NCBI RefSeq assembly: GCF_036588685.1
Contig: NC_086376.1
Coordinates: forward strand, 44,702,001 to 44,766,000
DNA: 64,000 nt
Reading direction: 5' to 3'
DNA from: Mytilus trossulus
Lineage: Eukaryota
The translations under genes were made by a program, and so were the position numbers. Shown one piece after another: positions 2,270-32,897 of the stretch (its first letter is position 1; each line of letters opens with the position of its first letter). The notes beneath the pieces were generated by a model, which worked only from the letters and a program-made list of their open reading frames with translations, did no database searches and was not told the origin of the DNA.

Positions 2270-2993
2270 CCCTCTTACTTTTACCTTTGTAACCATGTCC
2301 TAATCTTTCTTAACTTTGCTAACTATGTTCTTTCCTTTCGTTTCTTAGCTTTGTTAACCATGTCCTTTCCTTTCGTTTCTTACCTTTGCTAGCCATGACT
2401 TTATCTTCCTTTTCGGTATAAGCTTTGCTAGCCATTTCCTTTCATTTCGTTTCTTACCTTTGTTAACCATGTCCTTTCCTTTCGTTTCTTACTTTTGCTA
2501 GCCATGTCTTTTCCTCTCTTACCTTTGCTAACCATGACTTTATCTTCCTTTTCGGTATAAGCTTTGCTAGCCATTTCCTTTTATTTCGTTTCTTACCTTT
2601 GTTAACCATGTCCTTTCCTTTCGTTTCTTACTTTTGCTAGCCATTTCCTTTCCTTTCCTACCTTTGCTAACCATGTTCTTTCCTTTCGTTTCTCACCTTT
2701 GCTAGCCATTTCCTTTCGTTTCTTACCTTTGCTAGCTATGACCTTTCGTTTCTCACCTTTGCTAGCCATGTCCTTTTCTTTCTTACCTTTGCTAGCCTTG
2801 TCCTTTTCTTTCTTACCTTTGCTAGCCATTTCCTTTCCTTGCCTACCTTTGCTAGCCATGTCCTTTCCTTTCTTACCTTTGCTAGCCATGTCCTTTCCTT
2901 TCTTACCTTTGCTAACCATGTTCTTTCCTTTCTTACCTTTGCTAACCATGTTCTTTCCATTCGTTTCTTACCTTTGCTAACCATGTTCTTTCC
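2270..2993 (-). repeat. ~30-bp minisatellite made from the Kv-A exon 1/intron junction (about 23 units)
   Basis: Unit GAAAGGAAAGRACATGGYTAGCAAAG|GTAA; 139-bp higher-order duplication (2393 vs 2532); the ORF-track ORFs here are repeat translations. Confidence 0.95.
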
Positions 2994-3424
2994 TTATAAT
3001 CAATAATCCTCCAGATACGAGTTTTACCACTGCATGGTTTTGAAGTACCTTTGTCGCTTTGTATAATACTGTTCTTGAACTCTGTTTTAGTTTTGTAACC
3101 TTCTAAAAACTGCATGTAATTCATTAAACAGCATTGTTCCATAAGTTCATGATCTATTTCCCAGTACTCTAATTCCTCTTTGAAAACATTTGGACAAACG
3201 TTTGGAGGCAAGTGTAATTTTCCGGTCTGATAAAACACTAGAATTGATTCAAAACACATGGGTGGTCTATTAAAATGAAGTTCTTCTTGCTTTGTGCTTT
3301 GAGATGCACTTACTAGTTTTCCTAAACGTGAGCTAGGATGAGTAAGAAGGGATTTTCGAGTAACTTCGTATTTAGTCCCAGATATGTTCAAAAGAATTCT
3401 GCTCGAGTTTGTAAAGGGTTCCAT
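2972..3424 (-). CDS. Kv-A exon 1, T1/BTB tetramerisation domain (Shaw/Shab-like)
   Basis: MEPF...LNISGTKYE...FYQTGKLHLPPNVCPNVFKEELEYWEID...CC with HX5CX20CC motif; 151 codons ending WLAK|GTAAG. Confidence 0.9.
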
Positions 3425-4029
3425 CTTCAGTATACTTGGAATGATTACCCTATATCCAATAATATGTAATACCAACCTTACAAAATTATAGAGATGCCAG
3501 AACTGAAACATTTAATAGCATAATCGAATGAAGTATTGATAATTAGGGAAATGAAAGAAAATTGTAAACACTCATTAAAACAATAATAAACCAATTACTT
3601 TCTCAATGGGAATGCACTATCAATGTTTTTCCTTTTATTCTTGTCAATGTATGAACTTGTTCGTTCAGCATGTCTGGTATTTGATGATTAATTCCATCTT
3701 AGTCTAAGCTTGGTAGACTTTAATTATGTGGTTTGTATTGAAATTGATGTTTTTTCGAAAGATATATTAATGTCATCTCCAGTACTTGAAACCTTTTATA
3801 AACGCATTTGATATCACCTAGGATGTTAGTTCATATCAATAAAATTAATTAACAGAAATCATTCAAAAATTTATCCCATAACAAATACTTGATAAGAAAA
3901 AGGTTCGGATCCTAATTCAAATGTAGAAACATTCAGAAATATAAAAATGTAGTAAATACCAAACCGCAAAATAAAAAATATACAGAAGTACGACAATGAA
4001 AGAACAAATTGTGAACTATATCAAATTGG

Positions 4030-4220: not shown

Positions 4221-6449
4221 ATGGAAAAAAATAAAATCCGAAAAATACTGAACTCTGAGGAAAATTCAAAACGGATATTTCCTAATCAAATGGCAAATTC
4301 AAATGATAAAACACATCAATCGAATGGACAAAAACTTTCATATTCCTGACTTGGTACAGGTTTCTTCTTAAGTAGTGAATGAGGGAATACATCTGGATTC
4401 AAAGCAAGCTTTACCTTTCACTTGTATGACATTCAAGTAAAATTCCATTATACTCACAACAACATGTCAAACAAACAGATATAAAAGGTTAACATGTCAA
4501 AAATCAGGTACGCAGTCAAATGTGTGAAATTTCTTAATCACTATAAAAAAAACTTTGTCATCAAAGAGGAATAAAACGACCTGTCGACACTCAAAAGACA
4601 AGGCAAATGAGCAAAAATGAAAGACAGGAATACAAAATATGATATTACCTGGAAAAGGGACTAAAGATGGAAAATATACAAAAAAAGACAAATTAAAAGA
4701 TGATAAACACCGTCAGTAACTATAATCTAAACTTCAAGACCATCATGTATTATTTGTTAAGTTTTCTCCGAAAATGGTGACATTTTATAAAGTTTGAGTA
4801 ACAGCTGCAGGCTCTTGAATACATAAGAAGTTGGGAAATGTTTATCCCATAATCAGGTAAATTTATTATATTACTGATTAGGCGGAGGGAATTTATAATT
4901 TCAAAATTTTAATCGTCTCGTTTGTCATAGATTCTGGTACTGAAATGACCGATTATGTCTAATTCGAGGTATGAGTATAAGATCGAGGCAGAGAAAGCCT
5001 TGTATTTCATTTTCTAGAGGATACATTAATGGAACCCAATCAGAAAGTTTTTAATTGTTCATGGAAAGAACATCATCAATATATCAGAATATTAAATTAA
5101 ATTACCAGACTTCTTTGATTGTATGAGTGTCTGATGGAACTCCGACTATAACTTAGAACCCAGCTCGAGGCGAACACGCCACAACGAGACCACCAAGCCG
5201 GCACTTTTAGATACAGGTTTTGTGGTGAATGTGAACTTGAAACTAAAGAACCTAGCTAGCAAGGTGTCTTCAAACAAGGTAACTATGAATTTTGCTACAT
5301 ACGAACACAAAATCAAGACGTCAGGCAGTGGTGCACAATTAATACTCGATAGAATACTAATTACCAACTCCCTACTTAAATAGTTATTGATTCGACTCAT
5401 CAAATTTGTTATCGATAAAAAGGTCATGCATCTTGATAATACAATCATTGTACCGGTCGATAGCTTTTGTGTGGCTCTCCACAAAGCAAGAAGTTTGATT
5501 ATCCAAACCATGGAATTTGTATCTTCGTTTACCATTTTCTTTATTTTAAAAAGCTCTGTTCACCGATCTATCAATTGAGCAAGGGGAATACTGCAACATT
5601 GCAAAGATTATGACGAGAGATTTTCGATATACGTCTGTAGAACTTTAAAGAATCCATACGTGGATCTGATTGCCAGTGCTGATTGAATGTACTAATCACA
5701 CTTAGTACCTTTAATGGCAATCTTTTAAAAGAAATAAAAATGATCAATAGGCAAAAGAAGTATACCACTGTCGAAAAGTCATAAATCAATTGAGAGAAAA
5801 TAAATCCAGGTTGCAACTAAAACCGAGGAAAACAAATCAACTGTAAGAGAAAAGTAACGAAACAGAAGAAAAACTGAAGTGCAACAAACAAATAAAAAAC
5901 GACAATGCAACACGCACAGAAACGAACTATCAGATAACAACTGCTATTTTCCTGACTTGGTACAGGACATTTTAAGACAAAATGGTGGGTTGAACCTGGT
6001 TTTGTGGCTAGCCAAAACTCTTTTATTGTAATGCTAAATATACCATTAAAACGACAACTTTACCTGACAGGAATACAGTACAAATAAATGCAAGAACATT
6101 CTGGACAGAGAAATACCAAGAAAAAAAACACTACAATAGTAGATTTTGACATGCTTACCACAGAAAAATAACGAACACGTAAAACACCCCACGACATAAC
6201 ACAACAGAACCACTAACTGTCCGTCACATGACTCGAAAAACAAAATTGTGGAGAAAGAAAAATATAACAGCTGAAACATTGAAATTTAAGAAGAAACCTG
6301 CAGCAATTATTTCTATAAACAATTTGTGCCACTTTATATAGTCAGCCTATAAAACAACAGGAACAATGTGTATATGCAAGACATACTTGAAGAGAAATAA
6401 AAATCAGTTCAATCTACACCAAAAGTAATAAACATATAAATTTCCTATA

Positions 6450-6720
6450 ATTGCGACCATATCAATAAATATTCATGTCAACACAGAAGTGCTGACTACT
6501 GGGCTGGTGATACCCTTGGGGAACAAAAATTTCACCAGCAGTGGTATCGACCCAGTAGTTGTAAATAAACTTATCATAGATACCAGGATTGAAATTTTAT
6601 GTTTACGCCAGACGCGCGTTTTGTCTACAAAGGACTCAACAGTTAAGTTCGATTAAAAAAAAAGTTAAAAAGGCCAAATAAAGTATGAAGTTGGAGAGCA
6701 GCGAGGATACAAAAGTTCTT
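6450..6720 (-). mobile_element. Degenerate retrozyme family A copy (hammerhead core mutated)
   Basis: Homologous to 15722-16192; core reads CUGUUGA...AAAA. Confidence 0.7.
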
Positions 6721-7284
6721 ACAGGTTTTTAGACTGACAGAATTTAATTCGATGAAGACAAAGTCATTTAAATAGAAGTGTTGTATATTTAACAATTATG
6801 TAGCACAATTGAATCCGGCTTGAGACTATTTGTTCTAGTTTTGCAAAACAAACAAAAAAAGTGCCTCACTATGTTTGGATAATTTGTCTAAAAAAAACAA
6901 TAGATTATCAATCGATAAATGTATTATAATCAAACCAAACAGTTTTTGCGTGATCACTAGTATATTTTCTCACTGAATAGTTGCTTTTCTACACACACAC
7001 ACACACAAACAAACGTTAAACATAGATACAACGTTCTTGTTTTAGGTCAAGAGAAATATAACTTTGTGCCACGAACATAACCGATTCAGCAAATACAAAC
7101 TAACACGACACCATAAAAATGTTGAACTCCTTGGTCGACAACATATTTGTTTAATATGATAGAACTATATTCCAACTCGTTCAAATTTTGTACTCCTACT
7201 CATATTACATACAAGGAATTCATACTAAACTCTCTGAAATACAAATGGAAAAAGTGTTTTGCCAGTTCCGTAATATCACTTATA

Positions 7285-9669: not shown

Positions 9670-11277
9670 TTATAGATATATTCATTAACATATCACTCGA
9701 TGAGATTGATTATGTAATAAATGTTTGGATAATTCTTTTAAAATATTATTTTTTCAATAAAAACGAAAGTCGTATTCTATTTGTCACATTTGTTTTAACG
9801 AAAGTAAGACAAGTGAGACGGGTGAGAATATTCGAGGGTCACACCATGTTCTTTAATGTGAAATGGCAAATGGTAAACGAACAGTCTCGCTTCAACACAG
9901 AATGATAACAACTTTTAAACTGACTGAAATTTGTATATTTCTGTAGGAGAGTGTTTTAAAGAACTGTTTATTTGTATCCGCATAAGATATTGACTTAAGT
10001 AAAATCTATAATTTGGTTTTGTGTCAGATCAGATAACCCTGGTGGTATCTTAAAGGGACTCTATACCATGATCGCTATTCTACTAGCATGTTCATCGTGT
10101 CTTATGTTGCCTTTAAAAGAAGATCTTAACTAAAAGATGAGTATAAAAAAAAGAATGAATTTAAATACCTATATGTTTTGAGAAGGAAAAAAATAAATAA
10201 TCCACATCAATGATTTGTGTAAAATGTAGCACACCTACTCAATCTAATCAAATTTTAAACAATCTATGCTACTTCAAGATATTTTATGAACGTATACATT
10301 TATCTTCATGCGGAATGACGCTCAAAAACCAAAACAACAAAACAAATGAAAGCAAAGGGTGGATAAAACATCAAGAGCTTAATGGCAAGAATGGACATGC
10401 AAGGATAGCTTACACTCTAAGGTCAACATTTCCAGATGCCGTTCGACTTTCCTTATATTTTCTCTGTAAAAATAAGCACCTATACATCTTATAGTTTTAC
10501 AGTTTCATCACATTGATAAATTTAAAAGTGTTATTCGAAAATAACTCCATTGACTGCATATTTTTGGCAAAAGTTCAGTTACCTGAAAAAGTCAAAGTTA
10601 GTATGCGCAAAACAGCAGAAACTCAATAACTTTATTCATTGATTTCTTTAAGTTCTTAAGTTTTCATCAAATACGAATGAAAATAAGAAGTGAACAGATC
10701 AGTTCTATTTTTTTTATTAAAGGAATTATGAGAATTTGAATACTGCAGGAGCTATACGACTAAAAGATACATAAAAGATTATCCAAATTATGCAGACGTC
10801 AACTTTCCTAGAGAGAAATGAAACCTTTTTTTTTCTAAATGATTTTAAATTTCTAAATTTTCAAATTAGAATGGAAGAAGAATGTGTACTATCATACCAG
10901 TACCGAGACATTGATTGACAATTAGTTGATAAAACTCCTCGGGAACCAACAGTGTAATATGATGAATTTAACTCAAAATCACAAATTATGTTTAATTCAT
11001 CGTCATTTGGTCCAATCAATTAGTGATCGTATTTGATCATTCTGTTAAGGTCTAAGGTAACAGGAAAGATTACTCTATTAAAAATGTAATAAGATTTTCA
11101 TACAACCATAAGTCGAAATATTTATGATATTTATAACTGTTTCACAAATACAGTAGAGGCTAAATATTGTAATGTTGAACCATTTTGCTTTGGGTCAATT
11201 ACGCGTATTTTGATTTTGCCAAATAGAATTCAATGTCCAAATAAACTCATCATAGATACCAGGACTAAATTTAGTAT

Positions 11278-11321
11278 ACGCCATACGCGTGTTTCGTCTA
11301 CAAGAGACTCATCAGTGACGC
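11278..11321 (-). ncRNA. Minimal type I hammerhead ribozyme (family A, GUA cleavage triplet)
   Basis: GCGUCA CUGAUGA GUCU-CUUGU-AGAC GAAA C-ACGC-G UA/ UGGCGU. Confidence 0.75.
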
Positions 11322-12579
11322 TCGAATCCAAAAGAGTTAAAAAGGCCAAATAAAGTACGAAGTTGATTAAGTATATAAATCAATTAATAATTTTAACACC
11401 CGAAATGGATCAAAAAAGTAAAAGTGAAACATCAGAGTCATTATGGTTATATTTTGGAAAAATTAATCTAAAATAATACATTAAGTGCAATAATTTGACT
11501 TTAGAACATTATAGTAGAGCAATTGGATTTACATTTTGTTAATTAACAAAATGTAAAACGATTTTTTTATTTGACACCTGAAATAGAAAAAAAACAATAC
11601 ACTATATATAGCTAGAGACAAAATATGATATATTCATGAATTGGCCTAACAAAATGTACATCATTGGCAAAAGTTTGACATTCAACTGATGATAGATCTT
11701 TTCGAATTACATTTTATTAATTAAAATAACAACAGTCATCTTCCTTAAAAAAAAACAGCAGAGCACATCACAAACTACTTTCCGTATCAAAAAATTTGAC
11801 AGATTTTCCATAACTTAAAGAAGAACTTGTTGTTAAAATATCTACACATCAAACAGGAATTTTATCTTAACCGCACATTATTATTTTGATCAAGATATTC
11901 TTTTCCCGCTAATATGGCAATATTCAAAATATTTTTAAAATGACAAAACTACGTGACAAATACAGTACACGCAAAACCAAGAATAATTAGCACAGAGAAA
12001 CGCAGATATAATAATATAATAGTACATTTCAACATGTAAACTGCAAAATAACATCAGACAATTTCCTTCAAAAAACAGCCGAGCACACCACAAACAGTGA
12101 CGTAATTTTTCTGACGAATAAATTATATTAAAATTCATACTATTATATAAGATCCAAAACATTTACAACTTTTTTTACAATACTGGTCCAAATAATTATC
12201 ATGGCTATGACGGTCTTGAAATACTATATTAAATTAATGGACTAACCCAATCCAATGGTGGAAATAAGGACAGAGTTGATATTTAGATGTACTTGTGCTT
12301 GACAGCTGGAAACATTCAGTCTGTCACAAATCAATTCGGAAAAACATTTTGACGTGGTGTTCTGTCCTCTCAAACATTTATAGTAATGTGTTTCCAGTTA
12401 TCAATGTCTAAACCTTTTTTCATAGTAATTGTCCAATACCTCGCAAATATTAAAATTAAAAGCATATTTTATCTTTGATAAAGGTAAAGTGTCGTCTATG
12501 ATTATTGGTAAAACATTCTTCTTCTACTTTTTGTCAGAAGAAGAAACATTTATTTGAATATATGTTTAAAATACCAATG

Positions 12580-13630: not shown

Positions 13631-15756
13631 ATAGATATGTATTTTAATAGTCTCTCATAATACTTTTAAGAATGGCACATACATATATTCAATGTTTTAA
13701 ATATGTTTACTGTATATTTAACTATATAATTTATCTTGTTTTCATGATGTTGTATGTGGTGAGACTATTTTTAAAACTATTGAATCTGAATCTGAATCTA
13801 CTTTTGTCGACCTGTCTCGTGCATTAATTGGTTATCAAAGGTACCAGGATTATAATTCAATAACCCATTGTTGGCCTTCGGCTGTTGTCTGCTCTATGGT
13901 CGTGTTGTTGCCGCTTTGACACATTCCCCATTTCCATTCTCAATTTTATATCAGGAATAAGGAACCAGTATTATAAATTATTACACCAGACGCGCGTTTT
14001 GTCTACATAAGACTCACTAGTCACGCTAAGATCAAAATAGTTAGAAAGCCAAACAAGTACAAAGTCGATGAGTTGAAAAAACACCAGTACTGGCATTGAC
14101 CTCATTAATAAGTTTTCCCGGTCCACCACCTTTTTAGAACATACTAAATAATTCAATTGTTATACGTTTTGTCGTTTTTTTAATGTGTTTGTAATATTGT
14201 TCAGTTGACAATCAAAAATCATTCAGAACGCGATTATAAATGATTTGATATGATCAGATACTACAAAAAAATATAATTACAGTTATGGCATATTAAGGCA
14301 ACAATAGTATACCAGTGTACAAAAGTTATAAATCGAATAACAGAAACAATCCGGGTTACAAACTAAAACCGTGGACTAAGCATGTTTCTATATGATGATA
14401 ATTAGAGTGATAATTAGGAGTTTTGTTGCGTTTATTTGTGTTTGTTAAACATGTTGTTAAAATACAATATCTATTTTTCTATTAGTTGAAAATCACATTT
14501 AAAACATTCAACGCCTTAACTTGCTTTATAAGGAACGATGGAAGTTGCAAAGACCAGTTCGTACGTGTGTTGACTGATTCATATGAATAAAATCTCAATT
14601 AATCACTGACAGTTGCTATTTTAGATTGATTGTTTGGCCCTTAACAGCACAGAAAGGCTATATCGGGACGACCATTAAATTGAATCATTTGAAATATATG
14701 TTCGTATGTTACGAATCTATTTTAGCTGTGTCAACAGTTGCACGCCGTTTTTGTAGGGTCGCTATTTTCATAAATTTAAAATGTATTCCTAGAATAGACA
14801 CACATGTTTTTAACATATTGAAGCATTAAAAACGCTTTACCAGATTGATCTAATGTATTTTTTTCCTCATTTTGAACTTCTAAAATGTTGAATTTGTTAA
14901 TTGCCGCATTTGTTTTTGCAAATGTAAGACCAAGGAGACTGGGTATGAATGTTATTGAAATACCCTTTATAAATGTTTAATGTATGTCTCTTTGTGCCAG
15001 ACAATCAAAATTCACCATCTGATAAAATTTCACAGAAAGTTTATCATTAGTCCCTTACAGTCCATGTGAGCAATACAAGTAGATCGATAATCATGTACAG
15101 ATAGATATTATTGACAGGCCCATTAATCATTGTTGTGTAGGGACAACAGGTATATTGTCGATTGCAGATATAAATTCATATAATATTTATATATATATTA
15201 CACAATAGAATACGATGTCGAGCCATACTAATTGAAAATATTATTTCTGAAATACGATTGAAAATTTGACTGTAGAAGAATGAAGTTGATCTACTACAAA
15301 TATATATTAAAGATATTGAATTGATATGATGCAGTTATTAAGAGTATAAGAAATAAAAATGGGATAAAACATAAAAATTGGTTTTGTTACTGATAAAAAA
15401 ATGAATCGTTTACCCTTCTTCGTGTTGTTTATTCTTTAGTTTTCCATATTGTGTCATGTGTACTATTGTTTGTCTGTTTGTCTTTTTCATTTCTAGCCAT
15501 GGCGTTGTCAGTTTATTTTAGATATATGAGTTTGACTGTCCGTTTGATATTTTTCGTCCCTCTTTTCTTGATAAAAAGAAATCTTATATATATACCTTCC
15601 GGAGCACCTGAGGTCACCCCTAGTTTTTGGTGGGGTTTGTGTTGATTATTCTTTAGTTTTCTATGTTGTGTCATGTGTTCTATTTTTATTATGAATTTTC
15701 ATATACGTGAAACATACTGTTAATAGTTATCAAAGGTACCAAGATTATAATTTAGT

Positions 15757-15800
15757 ACGCCAGACGCGCGTTTCGTCTACATAAGACTCATCAGTGACGC
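15757..15800 (-). ncRNA. Minimal type I hammerhead ribozyme, intact
   Basis: GCGUCA CUGAUGA GUC-UUAUGUA-GAC GAAA C-GCGC-G UC/ UGGCGU; predicted cut between 15763 and 15762. Confidence 0.88.
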
Positions 15801-16111
15801 TAAAATCAAAATATGTATAAAGTCAAACAAGTACAAAGTTGAAGAGCATTGAGAATCCAAAATTCCAAAAAGTTGTGCCAAATACGGCTAAGGTAATCTG
15901 TGCCTGGGATAAGAAAATCCTTAGTTTTTCAAAAAAATCAAAGTTTTGTAAACAGGAAATTTATAAAAATGACCACATTATTGATATTCATGTCAACACC
16001 GAAGTGTTGACTACTGGGCTGGTGATACCCTTGGGAACGAAACGTCCACCAGCAGTGGCATTGACCCAGTGGTATAAATAGTTATCAAAGGTACCAGGAT
16101 TATAATTTAGT

Positions 16112-16155
16112 ACGCCAGACGCGCGTTTCGTCCACATAATACTCATCAGTGACGC
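16112..16155 (-). ncRNA. Minimal type I hammerhead ribozyme, core intact, stem II weakened
   Basis: GCGUCA CUGAUGA GUAUUAUGUGGAC GAAA CGCGCG UC/ UGGCGU; predicted cut between 16118 and 16117. Confidence 0.78.
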
Positions 16156-17217
16156 TCAAATCAAAATATGTATAAAGCCAAACAAGTACAAAATGTATAA
16201 ATCATATAATGATGTACAAATCAACATATAAATATTGTCGTCAATGTAGTAAAAGTGGTAGAACACGTAGCTGATTAATGGAGTGAATGCGAAGTGCAAG
16301 AATGGTATATCCCAGCCCAGTAATTAGATCTTCTGTGACATAAATTCTTGTCTGACGTACACAGAGTTCCATTTTGAATCTTTCTTTAATCCTAATAATT
16401 ATGTTGCCGCAGTTTCTGAGTAAGGAGCACGCTCCTGAATATGAAGTACGTAAAGTGTGAAATTTCACGAGCACAACGAACTCAGATATATTAACACCTT
16501 ACGCTGAGACAGAAGGTATGTTACTGCTGAGAAATGAGAAATTTAAAATTGGGAATTTGAGTTCTCTTTTTGTATTTTACAAGGTTCTTAATGAGTTCTG
16601 ATTCATATTAGTTCAAAAACCAATCGGCCAGGAGTAGTGCATAATAAGTACCCATTGGAATACCGACTGTCTGTTGAAATAATAATCCTCCAAATTTAAG
16701 AAATATTTTGTCGATAAAAATTCTTTTTTATAACGCATGCTGTTTCTTTTATGCAAATATGAATTCCATAATATTAAGGAAATGTGGTATGATTTGATCT
16801 AGAAAATCAACTTTTACAATTGTCCTACCTCTAACATTTATTTTTATAGATTTTTAAATCAACGTGTTTAACTAATTGACTAGGGATCTTTTAATTCTGT
16901 TCATGGTCCATTTGAAATTTGTTTTCCGATAATTATTAAGAATGGTTCCATCCTATATTAACCCCTAATTAGTTTGATATGGATTGTTTAAATTTTACTT
17001 TTCAGAATTTTTATTTATTGATTAGTTGTAGTAGCTTGTGTTCGTTTTATAGAGTGTTTTTATATAATTTTAGAACAAACAATAAACACTATAAATATTT
17101 AGTACGTTATTTTAACATAATTTTGATATTGATGATACGAAATGGTAAATAGGTATTTCATTGATTTTATTCATAACGTACAAATCATTCTTAATTTCTG
17201 CATTGCCATCAGGATTC

Positions 17218-18324
17218 TCAATACTTCTCTTTGATTTCAGCAGACGCGATGTTCTGTTTGACATCAATCTCACGAACCTTGTTTAATTGCTTTGGTCTTA
17301 CTACTGATTTCTCGCTGGGCCTGTTTCCAATATGAGCGATGCCGTATAACTGTACAAATGTTTCAACAAATATTGGGATAATAAGCGACATCATAATGAT
17401 TCCACACAATGCGCATACAGAGCACGCCATTTTCCCGACAAAAGTTTTAGGCGATAAATCTCCATAACCAACCGTAGTCAAGGTTATTAGTCCTAACCAC
17501 CATCCTTGTGGTATGCTATCAATATTGTCTCTCTCTTCTGCCAAGTAGATGATGTTCGCAAAAATCAATAGAATGATGACAATGTGAAACAGCAATACAA
17601 GAAGGTCCTTCGAATTCTGTCAAAGTGAAAATTTTAGCACCTTTACAGCAGCTAGATGTTGACAATATCGCAATAACCTTATCACTCTTAGAAACTTTAT
17701 AAAATCAACCAGACTTGTGAAAGTAGGCGAAAACTTATATCCACTCTTCATATTAAATATAACAATGTCAACATATGTGCCGATCAGAACTACAAATTCA
17801 ATAACATTTAAAAAATTCATGAAGTAAACTTTTAAACTTGGACAAACCAATAACCTTAATAATAGTTCAACTGTGAAAAAAGCTGTAGCAAGATAATCAA
17901 TCTGGTAGAAAATGTCATTTTTGAAAGTCAACGTTGGGAAAGTCGTTTTTAACGTGTCCTGCTGGCTATCATGTTCAGCTATACTTCCGTTCTGCGTTAC
18001 ATTTGTTGAAGAAGTTGTAATTTGAGGATTTCCTTTATAAGGAATAGATCTTTTACCGACATGCTGTTTTTGAGGCTGAAACTGCTGAGGTGGTTCCTTT
18101 TGGTCAAAATCAAATTGAAACTCGTTTCCTGTTGTAGTTATTTTAAGCAAATGACAGTCGTACTTCATGAAATAGTTTTTAACTTCTGGGTTAATTGCAT
18201 CATCAGCAACTACATATTCATACCATTCACATGTAGTCAGGGTACGTTTGTATTGTGGCAAAGTACTGAGTGCAAGTGTACTAACCGACAGCAAAACGAA
18301 GGCAACACCAACGAATAAGAATAT
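17218..18324 (-). pseudogene. Kv-B exon 2 (S1-S6, TTVGYGD pore) interrupted by one in-frame TGA at 17620-17622
   Basis: ttgcag|IFLFVGV...; S4 KFLRVIRLLRY; VLKFSL*QNSKDLLVLLFHI continues in frame through the pore and S6. Confidence 0.75.
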
Positions 18325-19562
18325 CTGCAAATAGTAAAACAGGTTCATGAAAAATATATACATACGAGTATATGTTTTTTGTTTTGTTGCTCTGGAGAAT
18401 AACAAATACTAGTTTTAGCAAATGAAGGCAAATTTTCACGGTTTTTTTTTTCTACCAAAAAGTCTCCAAATCTGGATTAAAACTAGTATGACAACGTCAT
18501 GTGTGAATTTAAGTTTCTAACATTATTTCGGCACTTTTTCTGAAAATAAAACAAAAGTATAAAATGGCTTAAGACGACAAAACAATGAAACGTAGATATT
18601 GACTATTTTTTAGTAATTTGCACAAAATTATAATTTTGAACCTAATTAGAATTCTATTTCAGAAATGATTTTTATTCAAATCAAGCAATGCAACATGTTA
18701 GTTAAGAGTGTCCTTTGTTTAAAAATTTAACAATATAAAACGTTTTTGTATTAACTTAACACTTACTTAAAGATGCGAGACCTATGATTAAGTACGCCAA
18801 ACATGCGTCAGTGATGAGTCTTTTGTAGACGAAACACGTCTCCTGTGGTCCAGGAACAAAGTTATCGTCTCTAAATTTTCCTTGTCTACAAGTAAAGTCG
18901 CTAGTGTGGACAGTGTATGACTTTCCATTATTTTCTATACCCTTTCCAAAAATATTTCTTCAAGTTTTATGCACCAAATAGAAAGTAAGGGACTTAAATA
19001 ACACTGTTTGAAATTTAAAGAAAATGAGTATTGACATGAACACGGTGTTAATCTCAAATTCGTCCTGTGTTCTAGAATGTGACCTACCGACGCTACGAAT
19101 GCCACATATGGATTAGGATCTGCTTACAATTTAGGAACAATTGAGATCAACCTGGTCTGTGATTGGGTTCGTTGTGCTCCATCTCTAGGTTTCATTGTTG
19201 TGTTTTGTGTAATATTGGTTTATCGCTTTTTTCTTTCCTTTTTTTTTTTGGTATTCGCATATCATATATGCCAGGATTTATATTGTACACCAAAATCACG
19301 TTGCCTCAATAAAAGACTCATACATGACGTTGGAATAAAAATGAGTTATAAAACCAAATATGGTACGAAGTAGAAGAGCGTTGAGGGCCAACATTTTTAC
19401 TCGATTTACAAATACAGCTAGGGTAATATTTTACTAGGTAGAAAAGCCTTATTTTTTTGAAAATTAAAGCTTATGGTACCTCACTTGTGATACGCTTGTC
19501 GGTGATTATTCGCTTAGAGAAAAATTGCTTAATATACATTAATGTCTGTCACCATTATTTAC

Positions 19563-20015
19563 CTTGGACAACCATGACCTTTCTTGATAATCTATAATCC
19601 TCCATACACGATTTTTCCTAGCCAATGGGCTCAAAGTAAAGTCCTGGCTTTGCTTAATAGTGGACTTAAAATCTGATTTGGTTTTGTAACTATCCAAGAA
19701 CTGAATGTAATTGAGGAAACAACATTGTTCCATAAGTTCATGATCTATCTCCCAGTATTCTAGTTCTTCTTTGAAAACATTTGGACAAATGTTTGGTGGC
19801 AAGTGTAATTTTCCGGTCTGATAAAACATCAAAATGGCCTCAAAGGGTACAGACGGTCTATTGAAATAAATCTCCTCTAGCTTCGTGCTATCCAAAGAAC
19901 TAGCTAGCTGCCCTAAACGTGAGCTAACTTGGGTTAAAAGAGAATTTCTAGTCACTTCATATTTAGTCCCAGAAATATTTAGAATAATTCTGCTGGATTC
20001 TTCCATGGCGTCCAT
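19563..20015 (-). CDS. Kv-B exon 1, T1 domain
   Basis: MDAMEESSRIILNISGTKYE...HLPPNICPNVFKEELEYWEID...CC; 151 codons ending WLSK|GTAAAT. Confidence 0.88.
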
Positions 20016-22909
20016 TTTGTTAACTAAAAACACCCGATGTTTCCAATCACATGCAAACACTTACCTGACAAAATCGTATCATTAGATTATTAATGGCTAT
20101 GAAATAGATATCATAAACTAAACACTCATTATGTTATCATCAAAACATTTCTGTTCCCAGTAGAATAACATAATAAAAATTCAACATCCTTTTAATTGAT
20201 TTGAATAAATAAATGAACTAGCTTGTTTTATTCCTACAGTATCTCAACAGGTAGGAATCGAGTAAGCTCATATGGATAAACGCTTGTTAATGATTTATTT
20301 TACATTTTCCATGCTGTATTGAAAAAAAATATCTTCCTCTTTTTAGATGTAAATTTCATTTAACCCAATTAATTTAGGTCAGAAAAATTTACCATTTAAA
20401 TATCAAGTTTAAACCTCAACCTTAAGCCGTCACTAGTGGTTTCATAAACATTAGTGAAAAACTGAAGGCACATAGAAGGTATTAACGAAAAATCATTATC
20501 AAATTGATTTCGAAAATCATTCTTCAATTGATATATAAAATTTCGAACTCTACAAAATCCAAGAGCATACTATAAACATTACAAAACAATTCAGCAAAAA
20601 ATTAAGTGCTGACCCAATTTCATCCCTAAACAGTGACAAAGATAGCATGAGCTACAGTTTGTGCACTCAATTTATAACCGAAACCATGTGGATAAGATAA
20701 AAAAAAATATATAACAAAGAAGCAAAAAAGTTTGAAAAGATACTTTTAAAACAATCTCCTTTTTTTTATATAAAAAATTCTAAGAGTACGAGGGAAGGTA
20801 AAGTCGTTCGCCTCCAAATGAAACAAACGACGAATACTCATCATATTAATGACATATGAAAATATGATTCATCTATCTAATTGGTTTGGTTTTATCCCTC
20901 AAAACGGTTTGATCCTAGGTGTGCAGAAATGTAAATCATTTCCTTCTCCGAATGTATAACCAATGCTACAATCCTTACACATTTCCAGGATCAGGTGTGG
21001 GACTTGGGTGTGTCAGTTCACCATTGTTTTCGTTTGGTTTTTTTGGTCTTTTTTGCGAGTGATTTCGGCATTTTGTGAAACGTCCATTAGGTTTAGAATT
21101 TGATTTCATCCTTAGTTAGGGTTTTTTCTTTATAGGATCCGTATTTAGATACCTAATCTCCTTATATATATGACGTTGATGTTACAATTTTTTTTTATAA
21201 CTAATCTTTTAACTTGTAACACATTGTAAAAATAAGGAGTTGTGTTTGCCAATAAGACAATTGTCCAAACGTCGAGGATGTAAGTAACTATACGAAAATG
21301 CAAGTGTGTCATTCATACCGAAAAAGCAGTGCACGTATCGTATAGTCACGAATAAAGGGTATGACATGCCAAAATATGAATTTAGTCCAACGAGAAAACC
21401 GTTACCGAATAAAATATTATTACAGACACTGTTTTACAGGTTTGTTACATGCGGACCTTGTTTCGACACAGATATTTTTGAGACTCCCAAAAACTCCCCC
21501 AAAAAGACGGGACTGTTCTTACAGCTTAACAAAAAGAAAAAAAATCTGTTAAAAGTGACTAGAAAACAGCTTGGCGTATAAGATTGGTTCCAAGCAAAAC
21601 AATATAACTATCATATACGAAAGATAAAAATTACCGATCTAAGAGTACTAAAAATAAGTGCAAAGCCAATTACAACTAATGAATACATCATATTCTTTCA
21701 GAAAAAAGTATCAATCAGTACACATCGAACAGGTTAAGTGTAAAGACTTTGTGAACAGCTAAAGAAAAGCATGACATTGTGCACTGCCAAACTGTAAGTT
21801 CAAAGTACCGACAGGATGTTGGATAATCAGCGGTGGCGTTGTCAGTTTATTTTCGATTGAATGTCCCTCTGGTATCTGTCGTCCCTCTTCAATAATTACA
21901 ATTTCAACAATTACTGATTGTCATTCAATCTTTTACAGTCTCCCAATGGCGCACAGAATTCAATTAATCCTGATTATGATAAACATCGATAGTAAGTAAA
22001 TATCATTATTTTTTTTAAATAGCAATCGAACTATAAAGATGTGGAGTAATCAATTGATATAAAACAAATACATATTAGTGTGCCATTTGAATTAATTGAT
22101 TTTTTAACCTACCAATAAAAATTGACGGGTTGCATTTAACAAGGGTATTCACAAATTTTGTCTTGATTTTTTATAATTCGTTTCAAAATTAAAACCAAGG
22201 TTTAATTGGGGTATAGATATAAGGTTATTAGACTTCTCTTCTTGTACAGCAGTTAACTTGTTTTAAAAGTCAGCTACGTCTAGTCGGAATGGAAACATTA
22301 AATCTTCTGTCTCGCGTAAACGAAGTGTCACACCTTTTACACATTAAAGCACCGCAACAGATCGGATGGTCCCGCAAGTGGTCTGTATTGAAAGGCAAGA
22401 TTTATTATCTAATCCATCATTAATAACTTCATTTTTTAGTGACATTAGAAAAATATCGTCTCTCCTCCTAGTCGACCCACTTTCCAAATTGATTTTCCTC
22501 TGAGTTCAGTATTTTTGTGATTTTACTTTTTTTTTTGTAACAAGTACCTATTAGAGTAACTGTCTTTTTTTCCGTCCTGAATATGCAGAAACTATTTGCC
22601 ATTGAACCTTTAGTAAACAAATTGGTCAGGAACAGGTGGAAGGCGCCATTTTGGTTGGTGAGTAACTGTTGTTTGATTTTTGTTTTTAACAATTTTATGT
22701 TTTTTATACCATGTATTGACTCCACAACGGCTAAATTTATGTTATACCATTTATTATTTATTAATAGTAGCTTGAGAGCAATGTTTTGAACAGGATGTCA
22801 ATTCTGACAAGAGTATATATGTTTATCAACCATTACATTCATTTTATTATCTACAGAGTCATATTGATTGACCAAAAGTTAAATCAACTATTTTCATTTT
22901 GCGGTTTAA

Positions 22910-25617: not shown

Positions 25618-25883
25618 ATGGGTGTTGACATGAATATCAATTATGTGATCATCTTTATAAATTTACTGTTAACAAAACTTAACTTGACTTTTTATGAAAA
25701 AATAAGGATTTTCTTATCCCACGAATAGATTAACTTAGCAGTATTGGACACAACTTTTTGGAATTTTGGAACCGCAATGCTCTTTAACTTCGTTCTTGTT
25801 TGGCTTTATAAATATTTTGATATGAACGTCACTGTTGAGTCTTATGTAGACGAAACGCGCGTCTGGCGTACTAAATTATAATC
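25618..25883 (+). mobile_element. Retrozyme family A partial copy; hammerhead 25826-25869 with CUGUUGA core variant
   Basis: ACGTCA CTGTTGA GTCTTATGTAGAC GAAA CGCGCGTC TGGCGT. Confidence 0.8.
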
Positions 25884-26084
25884 CTGGTACCTTTGATAAC
25901 TATTTAATATTTCGCCTGACCTTTGACACTCATACATCAATAATTAAAAATGAAAACATGTTATCTGATATAATATATACCAAGACATATTCAAATATAA
26001 TTTTGAATTCTTAATTCATTTCTAAAATAATCCGGATGTAGCGCAAATTAAAACAGTGAATTACAGATGTTAACAATGTAATAA

Positions 26085-26400
26085 ATCGATAATAAAATCA
26101 ACGGTACCAATTTTGTTGCACCAGATGCGCATTTCGACAATATATGTCTCTTCAGTGATGCTCGTGGCCAAAATATTTGAAATCCAAAGCACATATAAAA
26201 GATGAAGAGCTATAATTCAAAAGGTCCTAAAAGTATAGCCAAATTCGTGAAAGGAATCAGAGCTTTGCATCAGGGAGATACATTCCTTAATTTATAATAA
26301 TTTCTAATATTTTGTAACAGCAAATTTTAATAACACAAAAAATCCGTATTTTCATGCCAGTACCGAAGTACTGGCTACTGGGCTGGTGATACCATCGGGC
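26085..26400 (-). mobile_element. Retrozyme family B partial copy
   Basis: Collinear with but diverged from family A; shares CTACTGGGCTGGTGATACC and a hammerhead. Confidence 0.75.
26118..26161 (-). ncRNA. Minimal type I hammerhead ribozyme (family B), intact
   Basis: GCAUCA CUGAAGA GACA-UAUAU-UGUC GAAA U-GCGC-A UC/ UGGUGC. Confidence 0.85.
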
Positions 26401-27362
26401 ACTAAAGGAGACAAATCAAAATAAAAAAAACACAAACTGATGTAATCCAATGAATATAAAAAAAAAACGGCCAGATCAGTGCGTACAGATAGTAAGCGAT
26501 TCCTGCTTTTCAAGCATTTTCCGCCATGCAAATCTACAATTAGACAAAAGTAAAATCACAAAAATACTGAACTTAGAGGAAAATCAATTCGGAAAGTCCA
26601 TAGTCACATGGCAATATCAAATAACAAAACGCATAAAACAAATGGACAAGAACTGTCATATTCCTGACTTGGTACAGGCATTTTCAAATGTAGAAAATGG
26701 TGGATTAAACCTGGTTTTATAGCGCTAACCCTCTCACTTTGATGATAGTATCATCAAATTCCGTTATATTTACATTGATGCGTTAATTAAACAGACACAA
26801 TAAATAAAATAGTCAAAATATGGGTACATCGGTCATCATCGTATAACAATTCTAAAAGGAACAATTTAACAGAACACAAAAACATCTACTATCTACAAAC
26901 ACATTCGTTGATTTGTGCGAATCATCTCCCTAGCTAATAGACAGAGACATATCGTACTGATATCGTACAAATTGTGATGGTTACTGTTAAACTTGTATAG
27001 TGTCGCTCTTCTTCTTATCTCTACAGAAGCAGTTTGTGCGGAAAGGGACCGCATGTACAAATGAAGTGTAAAGTGTGAACAAGTGTAACTCATCAATTGA
27101 TATATGCAAACGCCATACGATATGGCAGAGGATTTGTTAAGCTACGAAATAGGAAATTGACATTGGAAAGAAATTGGCGAGTGGAAAGTTTAAATCATTA
27201 TGTTTTATAGACTGTTGTTTGAAGTTGTCCATATCGAGAATAAGATCAAAATACAAAGCAGAAGTGAAAGTTTCCGTTATAGTCTGAGCATAAGTTCATG
27301 CGGATATATGAGTTGCATAGACGCACTGAAATGTTGATTATTTAATGACATGGCATCATTAA

Positions 27363-29932: not shown

Positions 29933-32897
29933 TTAATCTTACTATTTTATATAAAAAAAATACTGGACGTTTTTAATTTTTACTAGGAGCGAGAAAACAA
30001 GTTCGGTGACACAATTTTTTCTTCTTATTTTCTTAAATCATATTTAAAAAAAAACATGTTCTCACAATTTATTTTAAATTCTATCTCATAGATTTCCTTT
30101 TATGCACACAAATATGTATTTGCATGATCATTCTAAGCAAATTTGTGCAAATTTCATCGACTCATCAAAAATAGCACGATGACCCATCCTTTTATTATAT
30201 TCTCAAAAAGAGCATAGTAAAATCTTAATGATCGCAAAGTAACAGAAAATTCTATCTCGGCAAACATATACATATGATTTACCTGAAAAGACCTGGTGAA
30301 AGACAGTTCATAATCAAACTAGACAAAAACAAGGTTTTCTTGTTATCATGTAAACATGTCATTTTTATCAATCACAAAACCCGGGTATGGAGTATGATGC
30401 ATTCTGGGGTTGCGTTTCCCATTAGAATTTCCTTGCAAGACTGTTTTTACTATTGACCAACTGTTTCTTAGAGATAAATCTGAAGTCATCTTAATTGTAC
30501 TGAACTTTTTCAAATATTTGTGACACAAATAACCACGGATATGTTCCCTTTGGTGTATCGACAATCTCGTCCTCTAGTCTTAGTTACTGTTCACATCGAC
30601 TGCGACTCGTTTACTGATTACATCTCTTCGTATGTTTAATGGGAAACATCATTATTTGGTGTCACCATACACCATGAATATGTTACTTTTAACTCATCAC
30701 ATAAATTCGTTATATGTTCTTAAATTGTCTCCAACTAAGAAAGCAGAATTTGCTTACCGATATTGATTTTTCTGTGTATGTATTTATGGAGTCGACCGTG
30801 ACTTGTACAATTTTTAAAACACAAGACACCGCCGATCGAATATATATCAAAAATGTAAATTAAATTATTAAAAGGAAATAAAATATGAACATACAGGTAT
30901 ACAGATAATACAGGTCTATCGATTGAGACACCAATCGAATCTCTTTTAAAGAACTTGGACCGCCAGACATTACAGATCGATAATTAACAATATAATGATA
31001 GAAAAGAAACGAATCATGAACAAGTCAAAAAAACAAAATATTGATAAAATCTCCTGTTTCTGAAATAACCACTAACAAATACGCTCGTTTACCTTTATAA
31101 GCCAACAATATTAAAGGTATTAATATAAAATACGTGAAGGAACTAAAGGCTTTAAAGCGATTTCTTTAAATAGTGTTAATCCTGGTAAAAAAAGACAGAG
31201 ACAATGGTAAACCGGAATTGCGATTTCATCATGATATAAAAAATATCCATTCTGTTTATTGAAACCAAAGAGGTATAGAAAGCCATGTGTATACAATAAA
31301 ACCAAGCATTCGTTTCAACAAAAACACAGAAAGTCAAAAGTTTAAAAGGCTCATCACATAATGAACTACTGAATATAGCTATCACTGAAACTTGAATCTA
31401 CTGTTTATTAAACTAAATAAGAAAATAAACAATCACTTAACAAGACCAAGTTACATAGCATCCAGAAATGTGCCATTGCTTTACATTAGAAAATCAACCT
31501 TCAAGTCAAATCGAGATAGGAACCATGTTTAACTTATCTTACCTCCCATACATTTCTAGCAATTTCATTGGTTTAAAGCGACTGCGTGGAGATCGTGTAT
31601 ATTTATAATTTATATGGGGAATAAGGTGCGGTTTTTTTAATACATGGTGTAACATCTCTTTAAAACACAGCGTTGAGAAAAAATCTAAAACGTTTCATCC
31701 GGACAACAGTTGAAGAAATTAATGATAAACGATTGAAATAAACCCAGAAAATGCATTTAAAGCTCTAAAGTTGTTATTGTTGGCATTTGTTTTCGTATAG
31801 ATCAATGGCAGTAGTTTTTTTCTTCATCACTTTGACAGTTCACTTTCATATTTGCCACATGTTAAGCTAATCGGTATGATTTTGTAACACGGTTTGCTAG
31901 TGATCTTAGATGATTTATATGGGGTCAGGAAAATCCATACGGGTTGAAAGCGAGCTTATATTCTGTTGTGTGTGGTGTGATTTATTTTTTCAAATAGGGG
32001 TGTCGAAATTTTGCATTATGTTTTAGTCCACTGAGATCCTTTCTTGTTCAGTAATATATAAAGATAGAGATAAGGAGATGTGGTATGACTGCCATTGAGA
32101 AAACTATCCACCGAAGTTCAAAAGAAGTGGATGTAATAAATTATAGGCAACCGTGAGTTATTTTGTATCTTGAAAAGCAATCCCCTTTACTATTTTAGTA
32201 AACTTCCATTACATTATATTTCAACCGATAAACCAATCTTCATATTATAGCTTACAATACAAATGTATTAAACGAAAAAGACATCAGTTAATTTCTTTGG
32301 ATTCTGCAAAAAACGCAAAATTACATAAAAAGGCGGCAAATCTTGAACCTGCGTTTTGTCTACACATTGTTTTATTCTCATAATTATAGTGAAAACGTCC
32401 CGCGAAGGGATATAAATAGAAGGCATTAGAACAAAAGGCTATGCAAATAGTGTCACGTTTCTGAAAGTAATGATCAAGGATATCCTTTTAATCATTTATG
32501 TTTCGAAAGTGCATATTTCTATCAATTAAATAATACTGGACACTTTCCTCACAAAGATAGCTCATGTTTAGGAAATTTAAAAGCAAAATCTTTAAATTGG
32601 AACTTGATATATCGGTTAACAAATGCTTTTATAATTTTACCTGGAATGACATATAGAAAATATAATATGTCACCATAGAGCTTATAATGTGAATTTTATC
32701 TGTAATGATGTTTGATTCAGTGGGGAAACAAAAAAATCTTGTTTATAACTGTCACATATCAATAATTCAAGAAGCAAACAGTTCATTAGTTAATGTGGAA
32801 TAACTGGATCAATTTGTTTGGTTTTTTTTAAAATTCGTATGATATTTAGTATCTAAATGAGTTCGTACATTCAAATCTTGTTTTGTCACACGTCGAC

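What the first reader, a model, noticed from the sequence alone, without database searches (positions are those of the whole stretch)
15722..16192. Retrozyme: 355-nt unit bracketed by two hammerhead ribozymes, predicted to release a circularisable RNA
Seen: two ~115-bp direct repeats 355 bp apart. On the minus strand each contains GCGUCA-CUGAUGA-stem II-GAAA-CGCGCG-UC/UGGCGU, a minimal type I hammerhead core with a 6-bp stem I. Established: tandem minimal hammerheads spaced by a few hundred nt define non-LTR retrozymes, which yield circular RNAs and are thought to be mobilised by Penelope-like RTs. To my knowledge ~350-nt units have been reported in Mytilus, so the class is probably not new, but this locus is invisible to ORF annotation. 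Inference: double cleavage releases 16117->15763 (355 nt). Stem II of the 16112 copy has an A-G mismatch and may be slow.
Basis: partly seen in the sequence, partly recalled or inferred. Interest (0 to 1): 0.85.

Follow-up and report, generated by a model that had tools for sequence, protein, structure and literature searches.

The report
Mussel hammerhead retrozyme copy, already known
This is a genuine but ordinary and probably silent copy of a known non-coding mobile element of mussels, whose self-cutting hammerhead RNA motifs release small circular RNAs; thousands of sister copies exist, and the family was characterised experimentally in 2020.

Summary
Two 116-nt direct repeats lie 355 nt apart (15722-15837 and 16077-16192). 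Each carries a complete type I hammerhead on the minus strand (Rfam RF00163: 33.0 and 28.4 bits, gathering score 34). The cut sites bracket a 355-nt unit, 16117->15763.

The element is 1.33 units of a dispersed family with over 5,000 first-look candidates in this 1.3-Gb mussel-like genome. It shares its ribozyme and much of its body with the Mytilus galloprovincialis retrozyme, for which self-cleavage and circular RNA were shown in 2020 (PMC7229834). The kind is therefore already known. This scan has also noted retrozyme arrays elsewhere in this genome (e.g. s1-820520, s1-826653).

Family RNA is abundant, strand-biased and continuous across the cut site. This particular locus looks inert:
- its unique flanks have no reads;
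- its private variants are rare in the RNA;
- its upstream ribozyme has a weakened stem II.

Covariation across three ribozyme variants keeps helix III palindromic, which supports a dimeric hammerhead. Insertions share a fixed 3' end about 41 nt past the cut site and have variable 5' ends. That fits target-primed, rolling-circle-type reverse transcription, as in Penelope-like elements. I found no autonomous partner.

The parts
15722..16192 (-). Whole insertion: 471 nt = 75 nt (unit positions 281-355) + one full 355-nt unit + 41 nt (unit positions 1-41), i.e. 1.33 head-to-tail units
   Evidence: The flanks are unrelated: 16193-16360 is unique in the genome, and 15419-15570 is a different repeat.
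16112..16155 (-). Upstream type I hammerhead, weakened. Stem II is GUAU/GGAC, leaving 2 Watson-Crick pairs, one A.G and one U.G. It cuts after C16118.
   Evidence: Rfam RF00163, 28.4 bits. It gives the only unpaired stem II cell in the pair count. It misfolds in the co-fold. 91-95% of RNA reads carry the consensus letters at 16133 and 16140.
15763..16117 (-). The 355-nt unit between the two predicted cut sites. It is 96.6% identical to the family consensus, and 7 of its 12 differences are C>T or G>A.
15757..15800 (-). Downstream type I hammerhead, identical to the family consensus (stem II GUCU/AGAC, loop UAUGU). It cuts after C15763.
   Evidence: Rfam RF00163, 33.0 bits. This is the commonest sequence among the hammerhead copies extracted from the fetched loci.
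15722..15762 (-). 41-nt 3' tail (unit positions 1-41) ending in ...CTTTGATAACTATT. This is the family's fixed 3' terminus.
   Evidence: Same end point (unit 39-45) in 23 of 26 bounded insertions at other loci and in 8-9 of 9 terminal copies elsewhere in the window. RNA reads run into heterogeneous flanks at this point.
16118..16192 (-). 5'-truncated partial unit (unit positions 281-355). The 5' end point is specific to this copy.
   Evidence: 5' ends at other loci fall at unit positions 17 to 304.

Best explanation
The locus is one slightly decayed copy (about 3.4% from consensus) of the mussel non-LTR retrozyme family. It is 1.33 head-to-tail units on the minus strand and carries two type I hammerheads 355 nt apart.

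How the family works:
1. A transcript with two or more ribozymes folds them pairwise into a double hammerhead, through the palindromic helix III (A-CGCGCG-U). This step is supported here by co-folding and covariation.
2. Cleavage after GUC releases a 355-nt monomer. Self-cleavage is shown in the literature for a sister clone.
3. A tRNA-ligase-type enzyme (RtcB) closes the monomer into a circle. This is shown in vitro in the literature, which also detects circles in tissue by northern blot.
4. A reverse transcriptase supplied in trans, most likely from a Penelope-like element, starts cDNA synthesis at a fixed internal template position about 41 nt 3' of the cut site. It runs round the template for 0.1 to more than 9 turns and stops at a variable point. 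This step is inferred here from the fixed 3' end, the variable 5' end and the fractional unit numbers of the genomic copies.

This particular copy is probably a silent relic and not a working source of circles.
For: Ribozyme motifs and geometry.

Family size and identity: 5,504 first-look candidates, copies 92-97% identical, some tandem arrays. Homology to the published M. galloprovincialis construct, including the hammerhead. Published self-cleavage (kobs about 0.1/min), northern-blot circles and RtcB ligation.

Fold: 98.8% of cells paired, 5 pairs with compensatory changes, 0 of 500 shuffles as good, and slid controls at 16-55% paired. Helix III is palindromic in all three variants: CGCGCG, UCCGGA, UGCGCA. 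The dimer co-folds at -31.5 kcal/mol against 2 x -10.6 for monomers, with an 8-bp intermolecular helix III.

Retrotransposition footprint: the 3' end falls at unit 39-45 in 23 of 26 bounded insertions, the 5' ends at 17-304, and lengths run from 1.1 to over 9.4 units. An unselected in-window sample gives the same result. A 27-29-nt micro-insertion (unit 13-41) sits inside a Naiad-type PLE 3' UTR. The tail and the hammerhead are the best-conserved parts of the unit, at 98-99%.

RNA: depth over the element is about 1,200 against 230-310 on the other read direction in two stranded libraries, while the neighbouring repeat is 1:1. Cover is even across the cut site and no end pile-up is seen there.

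Silence of this copy: zero depth in the unique flanks 15200-15347 and 16236-16383; 80% of reads are only 90-95% alike; the private letters are rare.
Against: Both Rfam scores are below the curated gathering score (33.0 and 28.4 against 34).

No cleavage or circularity was measured here. The reads cannot separate circles from uncleaved multimers or tandem genomic arrays, because the junction sequence also exists in the genome.

The strand assignment assumes a dUTP-type library and could not be checked on a known gene in the stretch.

No target-site duplication was found, and no autonomous element sharing the 3' end was identified, so the identity of the reverse transcriptase is inferred.

The predicted circle is not unusually stable: -71.9 kcal/mol, z = -0.98.

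The 30 loci were chosen for similarity to a full unit, which biases that sample. The in-window sample only partly corrects for this.
Confidence: 0.85

Rival explanations
1. This locus is itself an active generator of circular RNA. It is transcribed on the minus strand (for example by read-through from the Kv channel gene about 1 kb upstream), both hammerheads cut, and the 355-nt product is circularised.
For: Two complete catalytic cores in the right register. The element is on the same strand as, and downstream of, a Kv channel gene. A few per cent of reads carry the locus's letters.
Against: RNA depth is zero in the unique flanks on both sides and across 16236-17400 in three RNA libraries. 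The upstream stem II is reduced to two Watson-Crick pairs and misfolds. 91-99% of reads at most diagnostic places carry the consensus letter instead. The rare matching reads could come from sibling copies that share those letters.
Confidence: 0.08
2. The repeats are satellite-type DNA spread by DNA-level processes (unequal crossing-over, segmental duplication). The hammerheads are passengers, and no retrotransposition is involved.
For: Long homogeneous tandem arrays of 7 to over 9 units exist at some loci. No target-site duplications were detected.
Against: There are thousands of dispersed short copies on all chromosomes with unrelated flanks. They share one precise 3' end and have scattered 5' ends. 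A 27-29-nt terminal fragment is inserted in another element. DNA duplication does not predict a common internal end point.
Confidence: 0.04
3. The family is a true retrozyme, but it is mobilised by a reverse transcriptase other than that of a Penelope-like element, such as a LINE/RTE-type enzyme.
For: No sequence shared with a PLE 3' end was found. The only PLE match is an inserted retrozyme fragment. The 2020 paper leaves LINEs open as candidates.
Against: The copies have no poly(A) or microsatellite tail and no target-site duplications. Partial head-to-tail units with a roughly 40-nt extension past a unit boundary are the hallmark of PLE insertions (the 30-40-bp 'tail' and pseudo-LTRs of PMC8557442). 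Naiad PLE copies in this genome show the same 1.1-unit geometry with a fixed 3' end. A vertebrate study links PLE pseudo-LTRs and retrozymes by phylogeny.
Confidence: 0.12

Closest known systems
Mytilus galloprovincialis non-LTR retrozyme (Cervera & de la Pena 2020, NAR; PMC7229834; constructs Rtz/DRtz_Mg353, HHR A and HHR B)
   Same: Same hammerhead: stem I GCGUCA/UGGCGU, core, stem II GUCU/AGAC, helix III CGCGCG, cut after GUC. Unit size is about 350 nt, GC is low, copies number in the thousands, and they occur both as tandem arrays and dispersed. Long blocks of the body are shared. RNA is abundant.
   Different: One base differs in loop 2 (UAUGU here, UUUGU in the published clone). The roughly 40 nt after the cut site and parts of the body are diverged, so this is a sister subfamily. 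Reads of the published type appear as loose ends at 15756. This particular copy carries a weakened upstream ribozyme.
Newt/axolotl satellite 2 and Schistosoma SMalpha hammerheads (type I, active as dimers)
   Same: Type I topology, a weak helix III that is extended by pairing two ribozymes, and tandem units of about 330 nt that yield monomeric RNAs.
   Different: The unit sequence is unrelated. Here helix III is a perfect 6-nt palindrome that stays palindromic through covariation across three variants.
Penelope-like elements (canonical and Naiad types; PMC8557442)
   Same: Insertions are partial head-to-tail tandems with variable 5' truncation and a fixed 3' end that carries a 30-40-nt extension past a unit boundary. 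They coexist with retrozymes in the genome.
   Different: The retrozyme has no ORF. No real sequence homology to the PLE copies examined was found. The Naiad PLEs here carry a twister-like module rather than a hammerhead.
Plant LTR retrozymes
   Same: Non-autonomous, bracketed by two hammerheads, with a circular RNA intermediate.
   Different: The plant elements have type III hammerheads, LTRs, PBS/PPT, 4-bp target-site duplications, 600-800-nt circles and high GC. None of these features is present here.

Membership tests
Metazoan non-LTR retrozyme | Type I hammerhead with all conserved core nucleotides (CUGANGA ... GAAA ... UH) and three helices | tested here: met
   The fold is supported by 5 covarying pairs, with 98.8% of cells paired.
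Metazoan non-LTR retrozyme | Two or more ribozymes in direct head-to-tail units of about 150-450 bp | tested here: met
   Spacing is 355 nt and the element spans 1.33 units.
Metazoan non-LTR retrozyme | Non-coding, no LTR/PBS/PPT, GC below about 45-50% | tested here: met
   The longest ORF is 80 aa with a TTG start. GC is 37%. There are no terminal repeats other than the unit overlap.
Metazoan non-LTR retrozyme | Multicopy, both dispersed and in tandem arrays | tested here: met
   5,504 first-look candidates, with arrays of 7 to over 9 units. At least 10 further fragments lie in the window.
Metazoan non-LTR retrozyme | Transcribed, with RNA continuous across the cut site (circular or multimeric) | tested here: inconclusive
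   Family-level depth is about 1,200, strand-biased 4-5:1, with no dip or end pile-up at the cut sites. Circularity cannot be told apart from tandem templates. This locus shows no flank reads.
Metazoan non-LTR retrozyme | Self-cleavage in vitro and circular RNA in vivo | not testable with these tools
   Shown for a sister clone in PMC7229834, but not for this sequence.
Rfam RF00163 Hammerhead_1 | Bit score at or above the curated gathering score (34) | tested here: not met
   Scores are 33.0 and 28.4 bits, full length 1-45/45, E 4e-6 and 1.3e-4. This is a near miss caused by the family-specific stem I and loop, not by a missing core element.
PLE-dependent non-autonomous element | Insertion architecture of PLEs: 5'-truncated partial tandems, fixed 3' end, 30-40-nt tail | tested here: met
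   Naiad PLEs in this genome have the same geometry. The definition is from PMC8557442.
PLE-dependent non-autonomous element | Sequence of the 3' region shared with an autonomous PLE of the same genome | tested here: not met
   Only a 29-nt block matched, and it is itself an insertion into the PLE. Only 30 GIY-YIG loci were sampled, mostly Naiad-type, so a partner may have been missed.
LINE-dependent SINE | Poly(A) or simple-repeat 3' tail and flanking target-site duplications | tested here: not met
   3' ends abut heterogeneous flanks directly. Flank similarity is no better than in mismatched controls, except at 4 loci that sit in other repeats.

The most novel reading that the evidence does not exclude
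The invariant 3' end about 41 nt downstream of the ribozyme cut site marks where reverse transcription starts on a circular or uncut template. The same end is seen in the 355-nt family, in related variants, and even in a 27-29-nt micro-insertion. A cleaved linear monomer would instead end at the cut site. If this reading is right, the genomic copies are a direct fossil record of internally primed, rolling-circle reverse transcription with a Penelope-type 'tail'. The three retrozyme papers I searched for it do not describe this profile. An earlier follow-up in this scan saw the same thing in the 566-bp family.
Probability: 0.5. Interest if true: 0.5.

Novelty: already known. Interest (0 to 1): 0.25.

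Why it matters
As a locus it matters little. It is one of thousands of copies of a family whose ribozyme activity and circular RNAs were demonstrated in 2020. It is still worth masking or annotating, because ORF-based annotation misses it and its reads pile up in RNA-seq.

The family-level pattern is more useful. A precise common 3' end that lies off the cut site, scattered 5' ends and a helix III that stays palindromic together give a testable model of how animal retrozymes are cut (as dimers) and copied (internal priming on a circle, PLE-like). They also give a simple genomic criterion for counting insertion events: count 3' ends.

Tried and rejected
- **Rfam at gathering thresholds.** It found nothing in the window. 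The hits appear only with permissive filters.
- **Monomer folding of each 58-nt ribozyme.** It does not recover the hammerhead and is no better than shuffles. The dimer co-fold does recover it.
- **Circle stability.** -71.9 kcal/mol, z = -0.98, which is not unusual, so I make no claim of a rod-like, viroid-style fold for this copy.
- **Target-site duplications.** Exact words and local alignments of the flanks gave no consistent duplication, and none for the window copy.
- **Tandem Repeats Finder.** It does not report the element, because 1.33 units is too short.
- **Shared tail with a Naiad PLE.** A 26/29 match ending exactly at the retrozyme terminus looked like a SINE/LINE-style shared 3' end. 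I rejected this: the PLE ends about 420 nt further on, and the block is an insertion relative to sister repeats.
- **Hammerhead downstream of a GIY-YIG relic (L055/L065).** It looked like a PLE-borne relative, but it belongs to the ~575-bp tandem retrozyme family.
- **Rfam on 20 PLE loci.** Nothing reached gathering score. There was only a weak twister-P1-like hit, 20 bits against 67.
- **Read joints.** The roughly 355-nt skips in contigs reflect the repeat itself and say nothing about circles.
- **RNA holders.** No indexed run that holds the sequence is on record as RNA. The RNA evidence comes from raw-read runs with the same species label.
Full report
**1. Observation**

The minus strand of 15500-16500 shows two near-identical segments. 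The repeat finder reports them as a 116-nt direct repeat, 15722-15837 and 16077-16192, 96% identical and 355 nt apart.

A strict hammerhead pattern occurs exactly twice in the 64-kb window, both times on the minus strand, against 0 expected in shuffles. Rfam's default scan reported nothing. With permissive filters, Hammerhead_1 (RF00163, type I) matches full length at two places:
- 15800->15757, 33.0 bits, E 4e-6;
- 16155->16112, 28.4 bits, E 1.3e-4.

The gathering score is 34, so both are near misses. Each motif reads GCGUCA / CUGAUGA / stem II / GAAA / CGCGCG / UC / UGGCGU. Cleavage after the C of GUC falls after 16118 and after 15763, so the bracketed unit is 16117->15763, 355 nt.

**2. What the element is**

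The 355-nt unit is a high-copy dispersed repeat of the window's own 1.3-Gb genome. There are 5,504 first-look candidates. The scored copies are 92-97% identical and lie on many chromosomes, and some loci hold tandem arrays.

The unit is non-coding (longest ORF 80 aa) and has 37% GC. The window copy is 96.6% identical to the consensus of 62 distinct full units. Seven of its 12 differences are C>T or G>A, as expected for an ageing neutral copy.

The literature settles the class. Cervera & de la Pena 2020 (PMC7229834) report the following for Mytilus galloprovincialis:
- about 5,000 type I hammerheads in 350-390-bp repeats;
- self-cleavage of a cloned repeat, kobs about 0.1/min;
- abundant circular RNAs on northern blots;
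- RtcB-mediated circularisation.

Their supplementary construct carries the same hammerhead, apart from one loop-2 base, and long identical blocks of the body. The window element is therefore a copy of a sister subfamily of a characterised family. This scan has already noted several retrozyme arrays elsewhere in the same genome.

**3. The ribozyme**

Among 75 hammerhead regions from 30 loci, 64 keep the catalytic core. The window's downstream ribozyme has the commonest sequence. The upstream one has two changes in stem II (GUAU/GGAC instead of GUCU/AGAC).

I aligned twelve distinct hammerheads. They include two other variants: one from the ~575-bp family, and one at window 26161->26118. On this alignment:
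- 98.8% of cells are paired;
- five pairs show compensatory changes on both sides;
- none of 500 shuffles does as well;
- slid controls fall to 16-55% paired.

The only unpaired stem II cell belongs to the window's upstream copy.

Helix III is a 6-nt palindrome with no room for a loop. It stays palindromic through change: CGCGCG, UCCGGA, UGCGCA. Two consensus ribozymes co-fold into a double hammerhead with an 8-bp intermolecular helix III at -31.5 kcal/mol, against -10.6 for each monomer. The monomer folds do not form the hammerhead. I infer that the ribozyme acts as a dimer, like the newt, axolotl and PLE hammerheads. That is consistent with the slow monomeric rate published for the mussel clone.

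**4. Architecture of insertions**

I mapped the unit onto 30 loci with 1.5-kb flanks. In 23 of 26 bounded insertions the 3' end (RNA sense) falls at unit position 39-45, mostly 41-43, reading ...CTTTGATAACTATT followed by the flank. The 5' ends fall anywhere from 17 to 304, and lengths run from 1.1 to over 9.4 units.

Those loci were selected for a full unit, so I repeated the test on the unselected fragments inside the window. Here 8-9 of 9 terminal copies end at unit 39-45. RNA reads add independent support: at 16077, the internal equivalent of the end point, over 100 reads per library run into heterogeneous sequence, which is the flanks of other copies.

No target-site duplication abuts the junctions. 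The window copy has none. There is no poly(A) or simple-repeat tail. The tail (positions 1-40) and the hammerhead (positions 321-355) are the best-conserved parts of the unit, at 98-99% against 93-97% elsewhere.

A fixed 3' end with scattered 5' ends is the footprint of target-primed reverse transcription. The end lies 41 nt past the cut site and not at it. This argues that the template was a circle or an uncut multimer primed internally, not the cleaved linear monomer. Fractional multimers are what rolling-circle copying would leave.

Penelope-like elements insert in the same way: partial tandems, 5' truncation, and a 30-40-bp tail (PMC8557442). Naiad-type PLE copies in this genome show 1.1-unit insertions with a fixed 3' end. 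The three retrozyme papers I checked do not describe this end-point profile. An earlier follow-up in this scan reported a fixed internal 3' end for the 566-bp family.

**5. Search for the autonomous partner (inconclusive)**

A search for GIY-YIG domains gave 615 candidates in the genome. Two leads came out of the 30 loci fetched.
- A Naiad-type PLE carries a 26/29 match to unit positions 13-41, ending exactly at the retrozyme terminus. However, the PLE's own end lies about 420 nt further on, and alignment with sister repeats shows that the block is a 27-29-nt insertion. It is an extremely 5'-truncated retrozyme insertion that then amplified with the PLE. It gives one more instance of the fixed 3' end, but it is not a shared recognition module.
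- A hammerhead 1.4 kb downstream of a decayed endonuclease domain belongs to the ~575-bp retrozyme family, not to the PLE.

Rfam found no hammerhead in 20 PLE loci. It found only a weak twister-like module in the Naiad tail, which matches earlier scan notes.

**6. RNA**

No indexed run that holds the sequence is on record as RNA. I laid three raw-read RNA-seq runs with the same species label, plus one contig set, on 15200-17400 at 90% likeness or better. The results were:
- **Depth and strand.** In X21 and X22, depth over the unit is about 1,200 for pairs whose first mate lies on the + strand, against 230-310 for the other direction. The adjacent unrelated repeat is 1:1. So the libraries are stranded and one polarity dominates 4-5:1. 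Under the usual dUTP convention this is the hammerhead (minus) strand. I could not verify the convention, because the Kv coding region in the stretch has no reads.
- **Cut site.** The two half-covered ribozyme bins add up to the body depth, and no pile-up of ends appears at either cut site. Most RNA is therefore continuous through the cut site, either as circles or as uncut multimers. The data cannot tell these apart.
- **This locus.** The unique flanks (15200-15347 and 16236-16383) have zero depth. 80% of laid reads are only 90-95% alike. At the places where the copy departs from the consensus, including 16133 and 16140 in the upstream stem II, 84-99% of reads (91-99% at most places) carry the consensus letter.

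I conclude that the family is strongly expressed and that this copy contributes little or nothing.

**7. Context**

The element lies about 1 kb downstream of, and on the same strand as, a Kv-type potassium-channel gene: T1/BTB_2 at 20060-19539 and Ion_trans at 18405-17218. On its 3' side is a different high-copy ~150-nt repeat. On its 5' side is 168 nt of unique sequence and then a third repeat.

**8. Verdict**

The kind, and essentially the family, are already known and experimentally characterised, so novelty and interest are low.

The modest added value is at family level:
- covariation that keeps helix III palindromic, which supports dimeric catalysis;
- a sharp common 3' end 41 nt past the cut site with variable 5' truncation, which supports internally primed, PLE-like, rolling-circle reverse transcription.

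Shown here: the motifs, the geometry, the copy structure, the covariation, and family-level RNA. Taken from the literature: cleavage, circles and ligation. Inferred: the dimeric mode in vivo, the circular template, the priming site, and a PLE origin for the reverse transcriptase.

Noticed in passing
window 39987-40427 (-): A second retrozyme copy with the same architecture (unit 304-355, then a full unit, then 1-41, about 1.26 units). It is more decayed, and my strict core pattern did not find its hammerheads.
   Followed up: partly
window 25619-25906 (+): A 0.8-unit copy on the opposite strand, ending at unit 43. Its hammerhead (25826-25869, Rfam 31.6 bits) has a core change, CUGUUGA instead of CUGAUGA, which should inactivate it.
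   Followed up: partly
window 26097-26406 (-): A diverged retrozyme relative with a different hammerhead at 26161->26118: GCAUCA / CUGAAGA / GACA..UGUC / GAAA / UGCGCA / UC / UGGUGC. Its helix III is again a palindrome. It was used in the covariation test and matches scan note s1-820834.
   Followed up: yes
window 11246-11366, 13959-14072, 13825-13867, 19260-19463, 38669-38746 (all -); 6447-6724 (-); 18804-18842 (+): Further short retrozyme-derived fragments. Most are 5'-truncated pieces that end at the family's fixed 3' terminus. Most retrozyme pieces in this window are on the minus strand.
   Followed up: partly
window 15419-15570 and 15636-15687: An unrelated high-copy repeat of about 150 nt (4,261 first-look candidates, 93-95% identical) lies directly 3' of the retrozyme. 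It has an internal 52-nt direct repeat 217 nt apart. RNA reads cover it equally on both strands and show 'goes back 209-217' joints, so other copies differ in repeat number.
   Followed up: partly
window 2942-3511 (-), 17218-20060 (-), 32883-36011 (+): Three Kv-type potassium-channel gene pieces (BTB_2/T1 plus Ion_trans domains), suggesting a local cluster of paralogues. The ORF at 59803-60360 (+) has a weak caspase-domain hit.
   Followed up: no
window 26649-26712 (-); L061 7929-7992 (+): An identical weak twister-P1-like module (20.1 bits against a gathering score of 67.2). In L061 it lies in the 3' region of a Naiad-type Penelope-like element, so the window probably holds a Naiad tail next to the second retrozyme relative. 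This matches earlier scan notes on twister-like modules in Naiad tails.
   Followed up: no
L061 7654-7682 (also L061 3054-3082, L062 2846-2874 and 7178-7206, L063 four places): A 27-29-nt fragment equal to retrozyme unit positions 13-41 is inserted in one repeat of the 3' UTR of a Naiad-type PLE. All copies of that PLE family examined carry it, and they are 95-99% identical to each other. It is a retrozyme micro-insertion that hitch-hiked on an autonomous element.
   Followed up: yes
L065 5586-5636 (-) and many places in G000 (e.g. C6:5163844-5171301): A tandem retrozyme family of about 575 bp, with copies 97-99% identical to each other and arrays of 10 or more units. Its hammerhead is ACAUCA / CUGAAGA / GACA..UGUC / GAAA / UCCGGA / UA / UGGUGU, which is related to the 355-nt family's ribozyme and to the first dozen bases after the cut.
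   Followed up: partly
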